This document shows, in pieces, positions 6,541 to 19,886 of a stretch of DNA of 64,000 bases. The position numbers and the translations under genes were made by a program. Each line of letters opens with the position of its first letter. Position 1 is the first letter of the stretch. The notes under the pieces are model-generated. The model worked only from the letters and a program-made list of their open reading frames with translations. It made no database searches and was not told the origin of the DNA. The stretch lies in IMG/VR virus record IMGVR_UViG_3300046694_000136, positions 62,001 through 126,000 of that record; one strand, 5' to 3'.

Positions 6541-6571
6541 AATCTAATGTCCTTTGATTGGTCAGGCTAAA

Positions 6572-6580
6572 CATAACATT
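6572..6580 (-). promoter_or_regulatory. Candidate late promoter (AATGTTATG)
   Basis: Matches the RATGCTATR motif recurring upstream of virion genes; phiKZ late promoters have TATG at the start site. Confidence 0.45.
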
Positions 6581-6655
6581 TCCTTTGATTGTTTTCTTAG
6601 GAGTATTTCATTGTATGTCTTACCTATACTTTTTGATTTTTGAAGAGTGGGGGTA

Positions 6656-6780
6656 AGAGTAAGACTTATGGAGTGGAGTAGCCCGAAGGGATACGGAACG
6701 GAATAAGGATTACTCTGGGGGAGTTGGTTGGGTTGGTTAGGTTCCGGATCATGCCCTACTGCCCTAAGGCCGCAGGCCTT
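6656..6780 (+). other. Purine-mismatch hairpin, G-rich tract and GCA-triloop hairpin (structured non-coding element)
   Basis: Nested complementarity 6656-6716 with symmetric GA/GA and GGA/GGA mismatches and a C-GAA-G loop; AAGGCC-GCA-GGCCTT at 6766-6780. Confidence 0.6.
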
Positions 6781-6896
6781 TAAAGAAAAGTATTTTATTA
6801 CTGTAATTATTATAAAGCTAATTTAAACAATTTAAATAACTCTATTCCTGTTAAGGGAGTAGGGTAAGGGTCTACTATGCAAAAAGATAATAAACC

Positions 6897-6904
6897 TACA
6901 TTAC
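6897..6904 (+). promoter_or_regulatory. Early (virion RNAP) promoter TACATTAC
   Basis: Variant of the phiKZ early motif TATATTAC, upstream of the 7023 operon. Confidence 0.65.
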
Positions 6905-7022
6905 TAGAGTGAATAAACACTTGATAATCTATTTTAAGCAATCAAGATGACTGGGTAAGGGGTTAGTTGGGATAAATCATCCTTAGTAACCCTTTGAGTC
7001 GATAACTGTAAGGAAGAAGAAA

Positions 7023-7703
7023 ATGACCATTGTTTGTTATGACGGTAAGAAGATGATCGCTGATAGTCTGGCTGCTACAGGGGATATGAAGCTCCCCGGA
7101 GCTTTTCAGAAGATCTATCATCCGCTGGATGATGAGTACTGGGAGATCAACAAAACAAAGGTTATTGCGTTTGGTTTTTCTGGTGCCTTGCCGGCGATTC
7201 CTTATATTCGGGAATTATTGAGTCAAGGGGTTACTTACCGGACGATCATTAAGCCGGATATCGACGTGGTCTTCGAAGCACTGTGCGTACTGGAAACGGG
7301 CGACGCGTACGTACTCAGCACTGAACCAACTCGGGCTAAAGGTCCAAGTGCTCACGAGTTCGTTATGGTTCCGGTACCAGTTCCGGTAGCGGTAGGTAGC
7401 GGTGGTGTGTTTGCCTACGCGGCTATGGGGCCTAAAGATAAGAACCAAGCCGAGAAGGGCGTAGAGGCGGCTAAACGGCTTTGTCCTTTCTGTGGCGGGG
7501 ATAACGTGGTCTGGGAGCTCCCACCTCCTCCAGAAGTCCCGAGCAAGCGTCCAGTATCGGTTCTGCCTGAGCTGGTAAACATTGAAGAGACCTATCCGAT
7601 CAATGGGCTCAACATGGGACAGCTTAAGCACGTGGTTAGTGGGATCGTATCTGATCTGATGAAGAAAGCTGATGAACCAGTGACGGAGGTGAAGAATGGA
7701 TAA
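7023..7703 (+). CDS. Proteasome beta/HslV-like Ntn hydrolase, copy 1
   Basis: M-T1-IVCYDG..ADS, QKI, VGSGG, CPFCGG; Pro-rich linker and C-terminal extension. Confidence 0.75.
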   Translation: MTIVCYDGKKMIADSLAATGDMKLPGAFQKIYHPLDDEYWEINKTKVIAFGFSGALPAIPYIRELLSQGVTYRTIIKPDIDVVFEALCVLETGDAYVLSTEPTRAKGPSAHEFVMVPVPVPVAVGSGGVFAYAAMGPKDKNQAEKGVEAAKRLCPFCGGDNVVWELPPPPEVPSKRPVSVLPELVNIEETYPINGLNMGQLKHVVSGIVSDLMKKADEPVTEVKNG

Positions 7704-7941
7704 TCCGGAAACTATCACGATTACTTTGCCTAAAGGTAAGCTGGATTCCATTGAATCAATTACTACTCGGCCTATCGAGGGATATCCTGGGGTATCTGAA
7801 GTACTGATCAATGGGGAACCCGGTCGTCTGCTGGTCGACCTTTCTCAATTCGAAAACAATGAAAATGATCTGCGACGTCTGTACACCGGTGTCGGGGAAG
7901 GTTTTATCAAGCACCATGTGCGAAAAAATAACAGGAGCTAG
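7696..7941 (+). CDS. Small hypothetical protein within the Ntn cluster
   Basis: 81 aa, GGAGG RBS, overlaps the upstream stop. Confidence 0.7.
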   Translation: MDNPETITITLPKGKLDSIESITTRPIEGYPGVSEVLINGEPGRLLVDLSQFENNENDLRRLYTGVGEGFIKHHVRKNNRS

Positions 7942-7942
7942 T

Positions 7943-8458
7943 ATGACTACTGTAGCTTGGGATGGTAAATTGTTGGTAGCTGACTCACAGTCCACTGTTA
8001 ACGGGCTGGCTACACTTAGTGTCTCTACAAAGATCTTCCTTCCCCCTGAAGGGGTTCTTACTAAATGGACGATCCAAGGAGAGTCGGTCGCGGCAATTGG
8101 TCTAGCGGGTTGTGCCATGGCACAATATACCTTTACGGACATGCTTGCGGAGGGGCTTACCCACCGTAGTCCAGTCCCTAAAGAATCCAGCTCCTTTGCC
8201 GCGTTGGTCATTACCCATACCGGTAAATGCTTCCGGTTTAACTATCGGAAGAAAGATGGCGAGGGTCCAAGCGTCCAATTGAGTTTTTCAAACGGCAAGG
8301 ACGCAATCGGTAGTGGGGGTAGTTTTGCCAATGCTGTGATGAGTATCAATATCGACGCTGGTTTGGCAGTACAGGCGGCTATCAATGTTGATCCTAGCAG
8401 CGGTGGTTCGCTTCAAATCTGGAACTCTGCTGAGCCAGGTGTTATTTCCATTCGTTGA
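7943..8458 (+). CDS. Proteasome beta/HslV-like Ntn hydrolase, copy 2
   Basis: Probable start ATG 7943 (AGGAG RBS): MTTVAWDG..ADS, TKI, IGSGG, DPSSGG. Confidence 0.8.
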   Translation: MTTVAWDGKLLVADSQSTVNGLATLSVSTKIFLPPEGVLTKWTIQGESVAAIGLAGCAMAQYTFTDMLAEGLTHRSPVPKESSSFAALVITHTGKCFRFNYRKKDGEGPSVQLSFSNGKDAIGSGGSFANAVMSINIDAGLAVQAAINVDPSSGGSLQIWNSAEPGVISIR

Positions 8459-8472
8459 GGTTAAGGGTAATT

Positions 8473-9066
8473 ATGACAACAGTAGCGTGGGACGGTAATA
8501 CCTTAGCAGCAGATACTCTTTACGTGGCCGGTACTCGTAAGCTGGGAGGGGATTATGAAAAGATCCTGCTTCCGGAAGATACTCCATGGACAGTTAACGG
8601 TAAACCCATTCTGGCAGTTGGCTTCAGTGGGTCGATTGCGACTATCCCATGCATCAAGAAAGTTCTGGAAGCTGACGCAGTACCCGGGGTTGATCCAGCA
8701 TGTGGAGATTACAGCTTCACGATCTTGTTGGTAACCGATAAGAAAGAAGTTTACTACTGGAACTACGGCTCCACTGCTAAAGGCGAAGTGATTAACGAGC
8801 TCTTCGCTGTGGAAGGTAATCACGCTATTGGTAGCGGCGGGATTTACGGTCTAGGGGTCATGGCCATTAAAGGCGATGCAATCAACGCAGTGAAAGCCGG
8901 TATCAAAATCGATGTCAACAGCGGCGGTTACATTGACGTGTGGTCTTTCGAGACTCCTCGTCTGCTGACACGGATTAACCCCAAGGGCGGTGAAATCATC
9001 TCTGCCAAACAAAACACACCTGCTCCCGAAAAGAGCAAAGCTATCTTATGCGCCGTGAACGGCTGA
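8473..9066 (+). CDS. Proteasome beta/HslV-like Ntn hydrolase, copy 3
   Basis: Probable start ATG 8473: MTTVAWDG..AADT, EKI, IGSGG, DVNSGG. Confidence 0.8.
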   Translation: MTTVAWDGNTLAADTLYVAGTRKLGGDYEKILLPEDTPWTVNGKPILAVGFSGSIATIPCIKKVLEADAVPGVDPACGDYSFTILLVTDKKEVYYWNYGSTAKGEVINELFAVEGNHAIGSGGIYGLGVMAIKGDAINAVKAGIKIDVNSGGYIDVWSFETPRLLTRINPKGGEIISAKQNTPAPEKSKAILCAVNG

Positions 9067-9175
9067 GTTAGCCATCGCTCCATCGAGATCGTGGTGGGTT
9101 ATGGGAGGTTAGACACCACACCCCCTCTTTACAGACTATTCTCTATCTGGTCTGTGAGGGTTGCCTACAAAACTT

Positions 9176-9230
9176 CCCCCCTCTCCCCCTACTCCTTCGG
9201 GGGTGGGGGTTAGGGGGTTATATTTTTATT
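9176..9230 (+). terminator. Intrinsic terminator
   Basis: C-rich/G-rich stem around a TTCG loop, followed by a T-rich tract. Confidence 0.75.
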
Positions 9231-9260
9231 TCATTTTTTGTAACTGGGACCAGATACTAT

Positions 9261-9397
9261 GTCCCCAGTACTGATTAGTGTGTCATGGCTCTCGTCAGTG
9301 CAAGGGGTGTTGCAAACCAATGTGATCTCCCCACACTCCATTTTGGAGGCCTGGCGATGCCCTATGTGGCGTAGGCATTGCCGGGTAACTTTTTTAT
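9261..9397 (+). ncRNA. Candidate structured small RNA
   Basis: Lies between a terminator and its own terminator (9350-9395), preceded by GATACTATG; several helices and a possible pseudoknot. Confidence 0.4.
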
Positions 9398-9426
9398 TTG
9401 CAATTTGGGCTGAAATATTTCGGCTC

Positions 9427-9434
9427 TATATTAC
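9427..9434 (+). promoter_or_regulatory. Early promoter TATATTAC
   Basis: Exact phiKZ early motif with upstream TTT, 70 nt before phuZ. Confidence 0.75.
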
Positions 9435-9503
9435 TAGGTTGTAGAGCAAATAGAGAATGCTTTATAACCTATTTTTGTAACGTCAACTCAAGAGTGATTA
9501 ATA

Positions 9504-10469
9504 ATGTCTGATTCTACCGATCTGAAAATCTGGGCTTGCGGTGGTACTGGTATCAACGTTTCGGCCGAAGCCAAAGCCAAGCCTCTGACTCAAGCAATCA
9601 AAGATGCACACGTGATCGGCCTGGACAGCTCTGACGCCAACGACAGCTCTGACCTGTTCGAAATCCACCGCATCGCAGGTCTGCAAGGCGCCGGCAAAGA
9701 CGCCAACAAAATCATGGACAAAGTCCGTCCGTTCGTGAAGGCTCTCGTTGCCAGCGAAAAACCTGGTAACCACAACATCGTCGTCGTGAACATCTCCGGT
9801 GGTACCGGTCGTGGTATGGCGTTCCAACTGGTGCGCGAACTGATCGAGAAAGAAGCGATCGTTATCCTGGCAATGATCTCGGACTTCACCTCGGTCACCG
9901 AGAAAGAAAACTCGGTCAAACAGCGCACTGCTCTGGTGAACATGATCAACCAGCTCGGCAAGCCGATCTGCTTCATGGAGTTCACCGAAGACGCTGACAA
10001 AACTCGCGGTGAAGTGAACGCGGAAGTTATCCAAGGCATTGCTCTGGCCTCGGTGTTCCTGAGCAAGTACAAGTCGGAAATGGAAGTCTCCGACCTGACC
10101 AACCTGTTCAACTACTCCTACGACAACAAGGTTCCGCCGGCGCTGAGTCGTATCCAGTTCTACGACGAAGTCACTTCCAAGGAATACAACGGCCCGACTC
10201 CTGTAGCGGTTGGTAGTTTGTTCATCGACAACGCTTCGGTTCGCCAAGTGTTCCCTGGAACGGTTTACCGTAGTACCGGTATTCTGAACAAGAAGAACAA
10301 CCCGCCTGGCGATCTGAAAGAACTGCACCTGACTCTCGACCACGGTGAAGCGTACGCTGCACTGCAAGAAGAGATCAAGGCGCTGGCCGACGACAAAGCC
10401 CAACTGGCTGCCCGCTTCGTGTCCCAGAAAGACATGAGTGCCGGTGCTGCTGATGACGGCTTCTGCTAA
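9504..10469 (+). CDS. phuZ: Phage tubulin PhuZ
   Basis: ACGGTGIN, GAGKD, tubulin-like SGGTGRG, acidic C-terminal tail ADDGFC; 321 aa. Confidence 0.92.
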   Translation: MSDSTDLKIWACGGTGINVSAEAKAKPLTQAIKDAHVIGLDSSDANDSSDLFEIHRIAGLQGAGKDANKIMDKVRPFVKALVASEKPGNHNIVVVNISGGTGRGMAFQLVRELIEKEAIVILAMISDFTSVTEKENSVKQRTALVNMINQLGKPICFMEFTEDADKTRGEVNAEVIQGIALASVFLSKYKSEMEVSDLTNLFNYSYDNKVPPALSRIQFYDEVTSKEYNGPTPVAVGSLFIDNASVRQVFPGTVYRSTGILNKKNNPPGDLKELHLTLDHGEAYAALQEEIKALADDKAQLAARFVSQKDMSAGAADDGFC

Positions 10470-17807: not shown

Positions 17808-17900
17808 TAGTACGAATCGAAGATATAAATGTGTGTAGGCATACACTGTGCGATTCTGCTAACAGTCACCCTTTCTTAAGAAAAGATGGAGTTATACCTT

Positions 17901-19886
17901 ATGGCCGTTCAACAAAACCGCAAAGGCGCGGGCAGCAATTCCTGGGATGGTAAAAATGGCAACGCCGCAGAGTTCTCCGCTCTGTCGGAACTCTTCCATA
18001 CCCCTTCCATGTCGTCCGACAACCGCCAGTTGCCGGAAGTTGATGAGGTGATCGAGATCCTCAAGAAGGGCTACACTGCGATGAGTGAATCCACCATCCA
18101 GCCTGCCCAACGCGCAATCATCCCGACTGTCGACAAAGTGTCGCCTGTCATCAGCTCCACCCTGCCGGGTCTGGTAATGCACCGCCTGGTCGGCCAGAGC
18201 GTCTGGGTCATGCTGGTACTGTTCTCCAACAAGGACAACGCCATCGCGACCGAAACCGTTCAAGTGCTTCAGCCTATGGGCATGCCGCACAAGACCTCGG
18301 TCCTGCTGACCCCGACCAACTACTTCACCCACGAGCTGGTCGACAACCTGAAGAAGCACTTCAAGGGCGTCCTGGAAAACGAAGGCCTGAAAGGCGAAGT
18401 CGAGATCATCAACCTGATGACCGAAGACTTGGAAATGCTGCAACACTCCCAGGCCGGTGAGCCGAAAGAGCGTCCACAGCGCATCGCCAACTACCTGAAA
18501 GGCGAGTGGGAAACCGCGGTGTTCTGCAAACTGTCCTCGGAGTATCCGAAGCACAAGCAGACTCTGCCTTCGCCGTTCAAAGATCCTGATGCACCGTACG
18601 GCAAAGACGGCTGGGCCGAAGCACGCGTTACCGCAATCGACGGCAAGGTCTCCCGCGCCGGCACGCTGATGCCGTCCAACATGGAACTGGTGATTTCGAC
18701 CACCAACAACCCGAACAGCAGCAACAACAACCAGAACAACCCGAACTCGAAAGGGATCGTGCGCGCTCTGGCTACTGTTCAGTTGTCGGCCATCAGTTAC
18801 CAAATGCACATGCAGAACATCGCGGCCATCTCGCAGGCCGGCGGTCAAGCCGATGCTATCCAGGCGTTCCTGGGCATCAACGGCGGCATGTACATGAACG
18901 GCTACCGTCCGCTGCACCCGGTCATCACTCTCGACCACGCCAACGCGGAAGAGATGATGAACTACAACAACGGCCTGTTCCCGCACTACTACGCGCTGTT
19001 CGCGCTGATGTGCACCAACACCGACTACATCTTCACTGAACCACTGCGTCGCGCCAACGTCGGCTCCCGGGGCAACCTGAGCTCCTTCGAACCGCGCATC
19101 GAACAGCTGGTTGCTCAGGCGTTCACCGGTGTTCGTCCAGTAATGGACGACAAGACCATCCTGGACACCGAAGCAGTCAACAAGTGGATCCACCAGAACA
19201 TCTCGCCGAACGCTCTGTTCCGCAGCAACGTGATCCTGGGCGGCCTGTCGTCCCCGGTGAACAAGCACCTGGAAGTTCTGTCGGATCCGGTCCTGGCCAA
19301 CCGTCAGTCGGCGGTACAAACCATGATCGCGGTAATGGACGCAATCTCCAAAGGTCGTTTCTCGCAGATCGTTGCGGAAAACGTCAAGTCTGGCAAAGGC
19401 TGGAAGCCAGGCGATGTTGCGCTGCACCGCACGAAGATGATCGCGGTGAACGGTCTCGCGAAGAACCCACAAGGTCGCGAGCTGAACACCCTGGAAGTCG
19501 ACGAAATGTACCTCGGTACTCACAAAGGTAAGGCTGGGCTGCAACAGTCCATGAACTACCTGAGCGTGCTGTACGGCACCAACAACGAAGAAGTTCGTTC
19601 GCGTTGCCAGAAGCTGCGTATCGAAATGACCACCGGTCTGTTCGATGGTCACGTGCACATCAACAACTTCGGTTACTCCTGCGTCTGGGATCCGCATCTG
19701 ATGGCTGTTATCGGTGCCGCTCTGTCGGAAATCGGTACGCTGAACGTTGCGAACACCTACAGCTCGATGCGTCCGAACAACATGGCGTTCATGCCAATGG
19801 CTGGTCTGCAAACCGTTACGTCGGTCGGCAACAGCAACAACATGAACCTCCTGGGTGGTTTCGGTAACGGCGGGATCTGGGGCTAA
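17901..19886 (+). CDS. chmA: Chimallin, major nuclear shell protein (phiKZ gp54/PhuN)
   Basis: About 660 aa, very strong codon bias, early promoter, immediately upstream of nvRNAP beta'-N, low-complexity termini; start set by GGAG RBS. Confidence 0.85.
   Translation: MAVQQNRKGAGSNSWDGKNGNAAEFSALSELFHTPSMSSDNRQLPEVDEVIEILKKGYTAMSESTIQPAQRAIIPTVDKVSPVISSTLPGLVMHRLVGQSVWVMLVLFSNKDNAIATETVQVLQPMGMPHKTSVLLTPTNYFTHELVDNLKKHFKGVLENEGLKGEVEIINLMTEDLEMLQHSQAGEPKERPQRIANYLKGEWETAVFCKLSSEYPKHKQTLPSPFKDPDAPYGKDGWAEARVTAIDGKVSRAGTLMPSNMELVISTTNNPNSSNNNQNNPNSKGIVRALATVQLSAISYQMHMQNIAAISQAGGQADAIQAFLGINGGMYMNGYRPLHPVITLDHANAEEMMNYNNGLFPHYYALFALMCTNTDYIFTEPLRRANVGSRGNLSSFEPRIEQLVAQAFTGVRPVMDDKTILDTEAVNKWIHQNISPNALFRSNVILGGLSSPVNKHLEVLSDPVLANRQSAVQTMIAVMDAISKGRFSQIVAENVKSGKGWKPGDVALHRTKMIAVNGLAKNPQGRELNTLEVDEMYLGTHKGKAGLQQSMNYLSVLYGTNNEEVRSRCQKLRIEMTTGLFDGHVHINNFGYSCVWDPHLMAVIGAALSEIGTLNVANTYSSMRPNNMAFMPMAGLQTVTSVGNSNNMNLLGGFGNGGIWG

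What the first reader, a model, noticed from the sequence alone, without database searches (positions are those of the whole stretch)
7023..9066. Early operon of three proteasome-beta/HslV-like Ntn hydrolases plus a small partner
Seen: three divergent paralogs, each starting Met-Thr (after start correction) with ADS/T, a conserved Lys (xKI), GSGG and (D)xxS/CGG, behind an early promoter. Copy 1 has CPFCGG and an extra tail; an 81 aa gene is interleaved; no HslU/AAA+ gene is in the window. Known: this residue set is the Thr-nucleophile active site of proteasome/HslV/Anbu-type proteins. Inference: a phage hetero-oligomeric, ATP-independent proteasome-like particle or deconjugase/transpeptidase, possibly destroying defence proteins or reversing ubiquitin-like tagging; a parallel to the phage's nucleus and spindle.
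Basis: partly seen in the sequence, partly recalled or inferred. Interest (0 to 1): 0.75.

Follow-up and report, generated by a model that had tools for sequence, protein, structure and literature searches.

The report
Phage proteasome-like peptidase gene cluster
A giant nucleus-forming phage carries an operon, probably expressed early, of three diverged HslV/proteasome-beta-like threonine peptidases plus a small conserved protein. The protein family was already named by bioinformatics, but no one has tested it, and this multi-copy, fast-shuffling arrangement has not been described.

Summary
Window 7023-9066 holds four tightly coupled + strand genes:
- c1: 7023-7703, 226 aa
- an 81-aa gene: 7696-7941
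- c2: 7943-8458, 171 aa
- c3: 8473-9066, 197 aa

c1, c2 and c3 are 29-31% identical to one another. Each matches PHROG 1040 ('peptidase HslV family'). All three keep Met-Thr, the Asp17 and Lys33 equivalents, the oxyanion Gly and GSG. The AlphaFold models superpose on HslV and proteasome beta (Z about 17), with residue 2 on Thr1.

[quoted passage not shown] Phage EL gp15 is the single-copy ortholog at the same site, just upstream of PhuZ.

Four features are not described in what I could search:
- Arrays of 1-3 copies in EL-like jumbo phages.
- A constant c1+c3 pair in this subclade, with c2 and the small gene as come-and-go modules.
- A strictly conserved proline-rich tail motif in c1.
- Mosaic alleles that diverge far more than the flanking genes.

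A phiKZ/EL-type promoter motif precedes the operon; chimallin and PhuZ carry the same motif. A terminator-like hairpin follows the operon. The genome matches no Pfam AAA or AAA_2 model.

The hetero-oligomer, anti-defence and deconjugase ideas remain untested. I found no direct evidence for or against them, and allele shuffling argues mildly against an obligate hetero-ring.

The parts
6889..6907 (+). phiKZ/EL-type (putative early, virion-RNAP) promoter motif, AATAAACCTACATTACTAG. It lies about 115 nt upstream of the c1 ATG.
   Evidence: TAYATTACTAG with up to 1 mismatch occurs 7 times in the window, all on the + strand, against 0.87 expected. It also precedes PhuZ (9427) and chimallin (17800). 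It is invariant in L058 and L061. It matches the published predicted consensus for EL (WTTTYAAACCTACATTATY) and phiKZ (TATATTAC) (PMC7058600). EL's annotated PhuZ promoter, and a similar site upstream of EL gp15, match it too.
7023..7703 (+). c1: PPH/HslV-like Thr1 peptidase, 226 aa, with a C-terminal tail. It is the ortholog of EL gp15. The Asp166 and Ser169 equivalents are both Cys (C154, C157).
   Evidence: phrog_1040 E 2.4e-20. AF2 pLDDT 87.8. HslV Z 17.1, with residues 2-169 matching HslV 1-174. The ortholog clade has support 99/98. The Cys pair is conserved in 9 of the 11 c1 orthologs tabulated.
7521..7553 (+). Conserved proline-rich tail motif of c1-type proteins, P-P-P-E-V-P-S-K-R-P (consensus P[PG]xP..[PLK]SxRP).
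   Evidence: R176 and P177 are invariant, and P167, P170 and S174 are at least 90% conserved, in 33 tail-bearing homologs. The motif is modelled with pLDDT 86-97. c2 and c3 lack it.
7696..7941 (+). 81-aa accessory protein, translationally coupled between c1 and the next paralog. Its fold and function are unknown.
   Evidence: Homologs P0155 and P0157-P0160 are always placed after c1. dN/dS is 0.14-0.27. It has no Pfam, PHROG, NCBIfam or PADLOC match. The ESM Atlas model is poor, with pLDDT 0.50.
7943..8458 (+). c2: compact PPH/HslV-like Thr1 peptidase, 171 aa, with the full canonical residue set. It is an accessory paralog.
   Evidence: phrog_1040 E 4.2e-24. AF2 pLDDT 94.2. Foldseek gives proteasome beta at probability 1.0. 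VIA-align gives Z 17.6 to HslV and beta2. Only one ortholog was found (L061, 51% identity). It is absent from L058, L059, L062-L070.
8473..9066 (+). c3: PPH/HslV-like Thr1 peptidase, 197 aa, with the canonical residue set and its own conserved C-terminal tail ending AILCAVNG.
   Evidence: phrog_1040 E 4.1e-20. The ortholog clade has support 100/99. It occurs together with c1 in every variant of this subclade. The tail motif is seen.
9177..9240 (+). Terminator-like element: a GC-rich hairpin followed by a U-rich tract. It closes the operon before the PhuZ promoter at 9427.
   Evidence: RNA fold -33.1 kcal/mol, z -3.3, with 0 of 200 shuffles as stable. It is conserved in L058 and L061.

Best explanation
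The locus is one transcription unit of an EL-related, nucleus-forming jumbo phage: a phiKZ/EL-type promoter motif, then c1, the small gene, c2 and c3, then a terminator-like hairpin. It encodes three paralogs of the PPH class of proteasome/HslV homologs.

How each enzyme probably works: there is no propeptide. Host methionine aminopeptidase would remove Met1 and expose Thr as both the N-terminal nucleophile and the general base partner, backed by the Asp17 and Lys33 equivalents, the oxyanion-hole Gly and the GSG loop. Each product is therefore most likely an active N-terminal-threonine peptidase. c2 and c3 carry the canonical set. c1 has the same triad but a Cys/Cys second shell and a conserved proline-rich tail.

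How the paralogs relate: c1 is the core gene of the clade. c1 and c3 form an old, constantly retained pair. c2 and the 81-aa protein are accessory modules that are gained, lost and recombined.

Likely role: the phage has no unfoldase of its own. The genes diverge two- to five-fold faster in dN than their neighbours, and alleles are mosaic. I therefore infer that the enzymes cut a limited, changing set of targets early in infection. Host or defence proteins are the most probable targets. I also infer that the paralogs are diversified specificities rather than fixed parts of one obligate particle.

Shown: the fold, the catalytic residues, the operon structure, the phyletic pattern and purifying selection.
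Inferred: Met removal, catalytic activity, early timing, oligomeric state and substrates.
For: Family and fold:
- PHROG 1040 matches.
- A family profile hits PDB proteasome beta5 (E 9e-8), HslV (2e-5) and BPH (6e-5), with the TT.., aaDS, K, GSG and DxxSGG blocks aligned.
- AF2 pLDDT 94 and 88.
- VIA-align Z 17.6 and 17.1 to HslV and beta2, with model residue 2 on target Thr1.

Catalytic columns: T, D, K and G-S-G are kept in all three copies and in nearly all 44 clade copies.

Operon: start and stop codons overlap or abut. The promoter motif is shared with chimallin and PhuZ. A terminator-like hairpin follows.

Synteny: EL gp15 ('peptidase HslV family') sits at the same site.

Ortholog clades: c1, c2 and c3 each form a supported clade.

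Architectures seen in the subclade:
- c1-c3
- c1-small-c3
- c1-small-c2-c3
- c1-small'-small-c2-c3

Selection:
- dN/dS is 0.14-0.24.
- dN is 0.15-0.45, against 0.065-0.13 for the flanking genes.
- Amino-acid identity is 51-79%, against 82-90% for the flanks.

Discordant allele relationships: window c1 is nearest L058 and L066, whereas window small and c3 are nearest L067.

No AAA or AAA_2 domain, and no homolog of the RAY HslU-like protein, is found in the genome.
Against: - There are no expression, activity, localisation or interaction data for any PPH protein. None was found in the searchable literature.
- The higher dS of these genes shows older or recombined alleles. It is not proof of an arms race.
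- c1's replacement of the Asp166 and Ser169 equivalents by Cys may weaken catalysis.
- Related arrays contain copies with Ser1/Arg33/GTG (L010_g3, L071_g3). That pattern fits non-catalytic subunits of a complex better than independent enzymes.
- Host HslU could still serve as the unfoldase.
- The phage also encodes a chaperonin, so a housekeeping proteostasis role is not excluded.
Confidence: 0.55

Rival explanations
1. Obligate hetero-oligomeric, proteasome-like particle. c1, c3 and (where present) c2 co-assemble into mixed rings. The 81-aa protein acts as an assembly factor or regulator. This would be a viral parallel to the subunit diversification of 20S proteasomes.
For: - The genes are translationally coupled in one operon.
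- c1 and c3 co-occur in every variant of the subclade.
- Arrays of 2-3 copies recur in EL-like phages: 22 of 111 loci, and all 22 are in EL-like jumbo-phage loci.
- In the three-copy arrays of L010 and L071, the third copy has Ser1/Arg33/GTG. That set looks catalytically impaired, yet the copy is kept as a full ORF, as inactive beta subunits are.
- c1 and c3 each carry distinct conserved C-terminal motifs that could be docking elements.
Against: - EL and several relatives have a single copy, so homo-oligomers are the ancestral working state.
- c2 and the small gene are dispensable between near-identical backgrounds. The c1 genes of L058 and L066 are 96% identical, yet only L066 has the small gene.
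- c1 and c3 alleles are reshuffled relative to each other. That is not expected for co-adapted ring interfaces.
- All three window copies keep the catalytic triad.
- No multimer model could be computed.
Confidence: 0.25
2. HslU hijack. The phage peptidases dock onto the host's HslU (or another host AAA+ unfoldase). They replace host HslV and redirect ATP-dependent degradation.
For: - The closest solved folds are HslV: E. coli 4g4e at Z 17.1, and the HslVU complexes 1e94 and 1g3i at Z 16.2-16.5.
- The N-terminus MTT(I/V) has no propeptide, as in HslV.
- The phage has no unfoldase of its own.
Against: - The models have only one helix where HslV and proteasome beta have the H1-H2 pair. This is the PPH/RPC trait noted in PMC8665760. 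It changes the face that I understand, from general knowledge, to contact the activator ring.
- No NCBIfam HslV model matches.
- The host is unknown.
- Nothing here tests binding.
Confidence: 0.12
3. Phage proteostasis or maturation. The peptidases act on phage proteins, in quality control alongside the phage chaperonin or in processing of early or injected proteins, rather than on host defences.
For: - The genome encodes a GroEL-like chaperonin, as EL does (PMC7185714).
- The operon sits between the structural gene block (PhiKZ_MCP-like, DUF7484) and PhuZ. It is retained at this site across the EL-like clade.
- Overall selection is purifying.
Against: - Housekeeping enzymes with phage substrates would be expected to evolve like their neighbours. 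These genes show 51-79% identity against 82-90% for the flanks. They also show presence/absence variation and copy-number change.
- The family also occurs in unrelated 40-50 kb phages and prophages, where a chaperonin context is not evident.
Confidence: 0.2
4. Non-degradative Ntn enzyme. It would be a connectase-like sequence-specific ligase or transpeptidase, or a deconjugase that removes a ubiquitin-like or other tag. It would act as a monomer or dimer rather than as a chamber.
For: - The subunit is compact and lacks H2 and the S12/H5 elements.
- The authors of PMC8665760 note that several new homologs may not form stacked rings, and that connectase is a ligase.
- The modular, independently shuffled paralogs fit stand-alone enzymes.
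Against: - There is no similarity to connectase beyond the shared superfamily. The best structural matches are HslV, beta subunits and BPH.
- No ubiquitin-like, Pup-like or ligase partner was identified in the operon.
- This is entirely inferential.
Confidence: 0.1

Closest known systems
[quoted passage not shown] 2021, Bioinformatics; PMC8665760)
   Same: - Phage-borne group I proteasome-like homolog.
- Thr1/Asp17/Lys33/Gly47 core.
- No propeptide.
- Second helix (H2) missing, and no S12/H5.
- RPC adds a C-terminal extension, as c1 and c3 do.
- Function is untested in both.
   Different: - PPH was described as a protein of about 140 aa. Here the sizes are 171, 197 and 226 aa.
- Tandem arrays are not mentioned in the passages of that paper I read.
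- Nor are the c1 tail motif P[PG]xP..SxRP, the c3 tail, the Cys/Cys second shell of c1, or the associated 81-aa gene.
- RPC was reported only from Proteobacteria. I could not fetch its reference sequences to test whether c1 belongs to it.
Pseudomonas phage EL gp15 (PPEV_gp015, YP_418048.1, annotated 'peptidase HslV family')
   Same: - Ortholog of c1, at 36% identity in the multiple alignment (35% over the N-terminal part by tblastn).
- Same tail motif (ELPPIPETPSKRP).
- Same position between the DUF7484-like gene and PhuZ.
- A similar promoter-like motif lies upstream.
   Different: - EL has one copy and no small gene.
- EL gp15 has the canonical Asp and Ser (DIFSGG) where window c1 has CPFCGG.
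HslV (ClpQ), the peptidase of the bacterial HslUV protease
   Same: - Best structural match: Z 17.1-17.6, rmsd 2.0-2.3 A over 142-145 residues.
- Met-Thr-Thr start without a propeptide.
- GSGG and SGG motifs.
   Different: - Only 17-21% identity.
- No hit to NCBIfam, and no individual Pfam hit.
- No hslU gene next to it or anywhere in the genome.
- One helix of the H1/H2 pair is missing.
- It carries extra tails.
20S proteasome beta subunits and BPH (beta-proteobacterial proteasome homolog)
   Same: - Same Ntn sandwich and the same catalytic residue set.
- The profile hits beta5 at E 9e-8 and BPH at 6e-5.
- Several diverged paralogs sit in one system, as with eukaryotic beta1-7.
   Different: - There are no alpha subunits and no propeptide.
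- The subunit is much shorter.
- Ring stoichiometry is unknown.
- Here the paralogs are gained and lost between close relatives. That is unlike fixed proteasome subunits.

Membership tests
Ntn-hydrolase proteasome/HslV superfamily | Four-layer alpha-beta-beta-alpha sandwich fold | tested here: met
   AF2 models have pLDDT 94.2 (c2) and 87.8 (c1). Foldseek gives probability 1.0 to beta subunits. VIA-align gives Z 17.6 and 17.1 to HslV and beta2. c3 was not modelled. Its membership rests on the PHROG match and the alignments.
Ntn-hydrolase proteasome/HslV superfamily | N-terminal Thr nucleophile with Asp17, Lys33, Gly47 and Ser129 (GSG) | tested here: met
   T2, D14, K30, G-x-x-G and G-S-G are present in c1, c2 and c3. 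They align to the proteasome motifs. Model residue 2 superposes on Thr1. Exposure of Thr by Met removal is inferred, not shown.
Ntn-hydrolase proteasome/HslV superfamily | Asp166/Ser169 second shell (DxxSGG) | tested here: inconclusive
   c2 (DPSSGG) and c3 (DVNSGG) meet it. c1 has CPFCGG, and this substitution is conserved in most c1 orthologs. The consequence for activity is unknown.
PPH (PMC8665760) | Phage-encoded, no propeptide, lacks helix H2 and the C-terminal S12/H5 elements | tested here: met
   DSSP of the models shows a single helix (c2 60-69, c1 58-68) followed by coil before the next strand. c2 ends right after the last strand. The trait is as described.
PPH (PMC8665760) | About 140 residues; membership of the authors' sequence cluster | tested here: inconclusive
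   The sizes are 171, 197 and 226 aa. The cluster reference sequences could not be fetched. The proxies used were PHROG 1040 and the nearest relatives, which are all phage or metagenome proteins beginning MTT(I/V)AWDG.
HslV of HslUV | Encoded with, and activated by, the AAA+ unfoldase HslU | tested here: not met
   Pfam AAA_2 and AAA give no match in the 234.5-kb genome, while the controls are positive. There is no homolog of the RAY HslU-like gp116. Use of host HslU is not testable here.
HslV of HslUV | Recognised by curated HslV/Proteasome sequence models | tested here: not met
   There is no NCBIfam match at E<=1. No Pfam Proteasome match was found for the window proteins; only 4 of 37 family members reach PF00227.
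Self-compartmentalising ring protease (HslV dodecamer, BPH or 20S tetradecamer) | Stacked 6- or 7-fold rings enclosing the active sites | not testable with these tools
   Only monomer prediction was available and model coordinates are not exposed. Multimer prediction or EM is needed.
Hetero-oligomeric proteasome-type core | Fixed set of co-inherited, co-adapted paralogous subunits | tested here: inconclusive
   The c1+c3 pair is always retained. However, c2 and the small gene are facultative, and c1 and c3 alleles are discordant.

The most novel reading that the evidence does not exclude
A virus-encoded, unfoldase-independent, multi-subunit proteasome-like particle. c1 and c3 (plus c2 where present) would form mixed rings, with the 81-aa protein as a dedicated assembly or regulatory factor. 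The particle would be made early by a nucleus-forming phage to remove host defence or tagging proteins. Its subunit composition would be remodelled by gene gain, loss and recombination. That would make it a live example of how homo-oligomeric HslV-like rings become hetero-oligomeric proteasomes.
Probability: 0.2. Interest if true: 0.8.

Novelty: new variant of a known kind. Interest (0 to 1): 0.5.

Why it matters
Phage proteasome homologs (PPH) are a recognised family, but I found no experimental study of them in the literature I could search. This locus gives the family concrete, testable handles:
- A conserved c1+c3 pair.
- Facultative modules (c2 and the 81-aa protein).
- A tail motif (P[PG]xP..SxRP) as conserved as the active site.
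- A cultivable single-copy reference, EL gp15 in Pseudomonas aeruginosa.

If the paralogs co-assemble, this would be the first viral hetero-oligomeric proteasome-like core. It would also serve as a natural model for subunit diversification.

If they act separately on host proteins, they would be a new class of early, fast-evolving phage effectors in nucleus-forming phages.

Either way, the current blanket annotation 'peptidase HslV family' hides three distinct ortholog groups.

Tried and rejected
- Megablast of the locus against GenBank phages found no match.
- Single-sequence phmmer of c2 against PDB found no match. A family profile was needed.
- Pfam, NCBIfam and PADLOC gave nothing significant on the four proteins.
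- Word-based homolog search of c2 returned only 4 hits. The exhaustive profile search was far richer.
- Runs X3-X6 were laid in the hope of transcript ends. They are low-depth, DNA-like contigs and give no expression information.
- RAY gp116 is cited in a preprint as a nuclear 'HslVU family' protein, and I considered it as localisation evidence. I rejected it. It is a 569-aa HslU-like AAA+ ATPase. Its neighbours gp117 and gp118 are unrelated to PPH, and the window's genome has no homolog.
- ESM Atlas look-alikes of the 81-aa protein are weak: RecX_N-like at TM about 0.5, from a model with pLDDT 0.50. I do not trust them.
- Rfam and tRNA scans of the flanking conserved non-coding DNA were negative.
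- The sigma-70 promoter scan found nothing relevant upstream of c1. That is expected for a phage using its own RNA polymerases.
- Multimer prediction and inspection of model coordinates were not possible with the tools. I therefore could not work out where the c1 tail motif packs, or the ring geometry.
- An S1-pocket comparison by eye suggests the paralogs differ. The residues around the oxyanion Gly are c1 GFSGALP, c2 GLAGCAM and c3 GFSGSIA. I did not push this further without a structure-based numbering.
Full report
THE GENOME
The window is bases 62001-126000 of a complete 234.5-kb virus genome with direct terminal repeats, from the IMG/VR collection. It is an uncultivated relative of Pseudomonas phage EL. 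It encodes:
- a PhuZ tubulin at 9504-10469, 44% identical to EL PhuZ over the aligned part;
- the nuclear shell protein chimallin at 17886-19886 (phrog_4795, E 2e-101);
- split multisubunit RNA polymerase genes.
Elsewhere in the genome there is a GroEL-like chaperonin, as in EL. The DNA recurs in rhizosphere metagenomes.

Four + strand genes fill 7023-9066:
- c1: 7023-7703, 226 aa
- an 81-aa gene: 7696-7941, whose start overlaps c1's stop
- c2: 7943-8458, 171 aa
- c3: 8473-9066, 197 aa

Homology, orthologs and Shine-Dalgarno-like sequences all point to the Met-Thr starts. Each of c1, c2 and c3 matches PHROG 1040 'peptidase HslV family' (E 2e-20 to 4e-24). They are the only such genes in the genome. 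They are 29-31% identical to one another.

FOLD AND ACTIVE SITE
- A 37-sequence family profile hits solved proteasome beta5 (E 9e-8), archaeal beta, HslV (2e-5) and BPH (6e-5). The TT.., aaDS, K, GSG and DxxSGG blocks align to Thr1, Asp17, Lys33, Gly128-Ser129-Gly130 and Asp166-Ser169-Gly170.
- AlphaFold2 models are confident: c2 pLDDT 94.2 and c1 87.8.
- Foldseek returns beta subunits at probability 1.0.
- VIA-align gives Z 17.6 (c2) and 17.1 (c1) to HslV and beta2, at 2.0-2.5 A over about 145 residues. Model residue 2 lies on the target's Thr1.
- Both models show a single helix where proteasome beta and HslV have the H1/H2 pair. c2 stops after the last core strand.

[quoted passage not shown] The proteins therefore belong to a family that has a name. 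I found no experimental work on it.

CATALYTIC RESIDUES ACROSS THE CLADE
In a table of 44 copies from EL-like phages:
- the Asp17 equivalent is invariant;
- Thr is present in 41 copies;
- Lys33 is present in 42.

c2 and c3 carry the full canonical set. c1 keeps the triad, the oxyanion Gly and Ser129, but has Cys at both the Asp166 and Ser169 equivalents (CPFCGG). This substitution is conserved in 9 of the 11 c1 orthologs tabulated. It is therefore a selected feature of that ortholog group, not decay.

COMPARATIVE ANATOMY
In EL, the single gene gp15 sits at the same place, between a DUF7484-like gene on the other strand and PhuZ. Across IMG/VR, Logan and JGI contigs, the same site holds one to three copies. 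Of 111 fetched loci, 22 have two or three copies, and all 22 are in EL-like jumbo-phage loci. All 83 GenBank phage records with a hit have one copy.

A maximum-likelihood tree resolves three ortholog groups in the window's subclade:
- c1: support 99/98
- c2: support 100/98
- c3: support 100/99

A separate duplication occurred in the L009/L012 lineage.

Within the subclade, whose flanking genes are 82-90% identical, I found these architectures:
- c1-c3: L058, L059, L062, L070
- c1-small-c3: L063-L067, L069
- c1-X-small-c3, where X is an unexamined gap of about 260 bp: L068
- c1-small-c2-c3: the window and its twin contig L007
- c1-small'-small-c2-c3: L061

So c1 and c3 are a constant pair, c2 is the rare addition, and three copies is the unusual state.

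THE 81-aa GENE IS REAL BUT FACULTATIVE
- It has homologs at 36-86% identity.
- They are always placed directly after c1 and translationally coupled.
- dN/dS is 0.14-0.27.
- The c1 genes of L058 and L066 are 96% identical, yet only L066 has the small gene.
- It has no recognisable family or reliable fold.

EVOLUTIONARY TEMPO
- c1, c2 and c3 are under purifying selection (dN/dS 0.14-0.24).
- They are far more diverged than their neighbours: amino-acid identity of 51-79% against 82-90%, and dN of 0.15-0.45 against 0.065-0.13. dS is also higher.
- Allele relationships are discordant. Window c1 is closest to L058 and L066 (78-79%). The window's small gene and c3 are closest to L067 (86% and 76%).

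The cluster is therefore a recombining island of old alleles inside a conserved backbone. That pattern is typical of host-interaction genes. It is also not what co-adapted subunits of one obligate complex would be expected to show.

TAILS
- c1-type proteins share the motif P[PG]xP..[PLK]SxRP directly after the core. Arg and Pro are invariant in 33 homologs, EL gp15 among them. The motif is modelled with high confidence against the core. A variable linker and an amphipathic helix follow.
- c3-type proteins share a different tail ending AILCA(V/P)(N/G)G.
- c2 has no tail.

I could not inspect coordinates, so the role of these motifs (docking, autoinhibition or targeting) is open.

TRANSCRIPTION SIGNALS
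- The motif TAYATTACTAG (up to 1 mismatch) occurs seven times in the window, all on the + strand, against 0.87 expected.
- It lies 126 nt before the c1 ATG, 77 nt before PhuZ and 86 nt before chimallin.
- It is invariant in relatives.
- It matches the published predicted promoters of EL and phiKZ (PMC7058600) and EL's annotated PhuZ promoter. A similar site precedes EL gp15.
- From general knowledge, the phiKZ TATATTAC element is the early, virion-RNA-polymerase class. Early timing here is an inference from this motif and from the company it keeps.
- A stable GC-rich hairpin with a U tract lies at 9177-9240 (z -3.3) and closes the unit.

NO UNFOLDASE
Pfam AAA_2 and AAA find nothing in the genome, while the controls are positive. 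The HslU-like gp116 of Erwinia phage RAY has no homolog here. That RAY protein is an ATPase, not an HslV-like peptidase. Its reported nuclear localisation therefore says nothing about this family.

INTERPRETATION
The best-supported reading is an early operon of PPH-class Thr1 peptidases, each probably active after Met removal. It has:
- a core gene (c1);
- an old partner paralog (c3);
- facultative modules (c2 and the small protein).

The fast, mosaic evolution and the lack of a phage unfoldase point to a limited and shifting set of targets early in infection, most probably host proteins. Operon coupling, the constant c1+c3 pair, and impaired-looking third copies in the arrays of L010 and L071 support it. 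Single-copy relatives, facultative members and independent allele shuffling count against an obligate complex. Use of host HslU, a phage proteostasis role beside the chaperonin, and a connectase-like non-degradative chemistry are the other live options. None can be settled without multimer modelling or bench work.

VERDICT
- The feature is real.
- The fold claim is correct.
- The family is already known and annotated.
- The multi-paralog, modular operon, with its tail motifs and small gene, is a new variant worth a bench test in phage EL and with these metagenomic genes.

Noticed in passing
window 6650-6721 (also L001:3491-3563 in phage EL, L010:5541-5610, L058, L061, L063-L069): A conserved hairpin of about 72 nt, framed by G-runs (GGGGTAAGA...TCT(T)GGGGG), lies in the divergent intergenic region between the DUF7484-like gene and c1. 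Its stem sequence differs between the window clade, EL and L010, but pairing is kept: 8 of 19 pairs show compensatory changes. There is no Rfam or tRNA hit. The functional strand and the role are unknown.
   Followed up: partly
window 6541-6890 and 9067-9500: Both intergenic regions flanking the operon are more conserved than the peptidase genes themselves. The upstream region has 79% mean column identity across three phages. Blocks such as GTTAGACACC and GAGGGTTGCCTACAAAAC upstream of PhuZ are shared even with EL. They may be regulatory elements or small RNAs.
   Followed up: partly
window 6897, 9427, 10552, 16104, 17800, 24686, 26380 (+ strand): The motif TAYATTACTAG recurs, and only on the + strand: 7 sites against 0.87 expected. 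It precedes c1, PhuZ and chimallin among others. It is a candidate map of phiKZ/EL-type early promoters in this phage.
   Followed up: partly
window 7778: One low-depth contig of run X4 lacks a single base inside the 81-aa gene. Runs X3, X5 and X6 do not. This is probably an assembly or sequencing error, but it could be a frameshift variant of the facultative gene.
   Followed up: no
G000:C1:~207.9-209.6 kb (outside the window; loci L118/L119): The genome encodes a 553-aa GroEL-like chaperonin (Pfam Cpn60_TCP1, above the cut-off), as phage EL does (gp146). The phage therefore carries both a folding machine and proteasome-like peptidases.
   Followed up: partly
L010:7274-7954 and L071:1473-2171: In two different three-copy arrays, the third paralog starts Met-Ser, has Arg in place of Lys33 and has GTG in place of GSG. 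This is a shared, probably inactive or re-purposed variant, kept as a full-length ORF.
   Followed up: partly
L060:225-905 and L060:916-1590: In this relative, both paralogs end with the same C-terminal residues (...PVLH and ...EVLH). This hints that the extreme C-termini are functional docking motifs.
   Followed up: no
L061:4497-4760 and L068:4679-4935: L061 has a second 87-aa gene between c1 and the 81-aa homolog. It is only weakly similar to the small gene (25% identity). L068 has a gap of about 260 bp at the same position, which I did not examine.
   Followed up: no
L120:1353-3062 (Erwinia phage RAY gp116): RAY gp116 is an HslU-like AAA+ ATPase, reported as nuclear in a preprint. It has no HslV/PPH-like gene next to it. 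So some chimalliviruses carry the ATPase half alone and others the peptidase half alone.
   Followed up: partly
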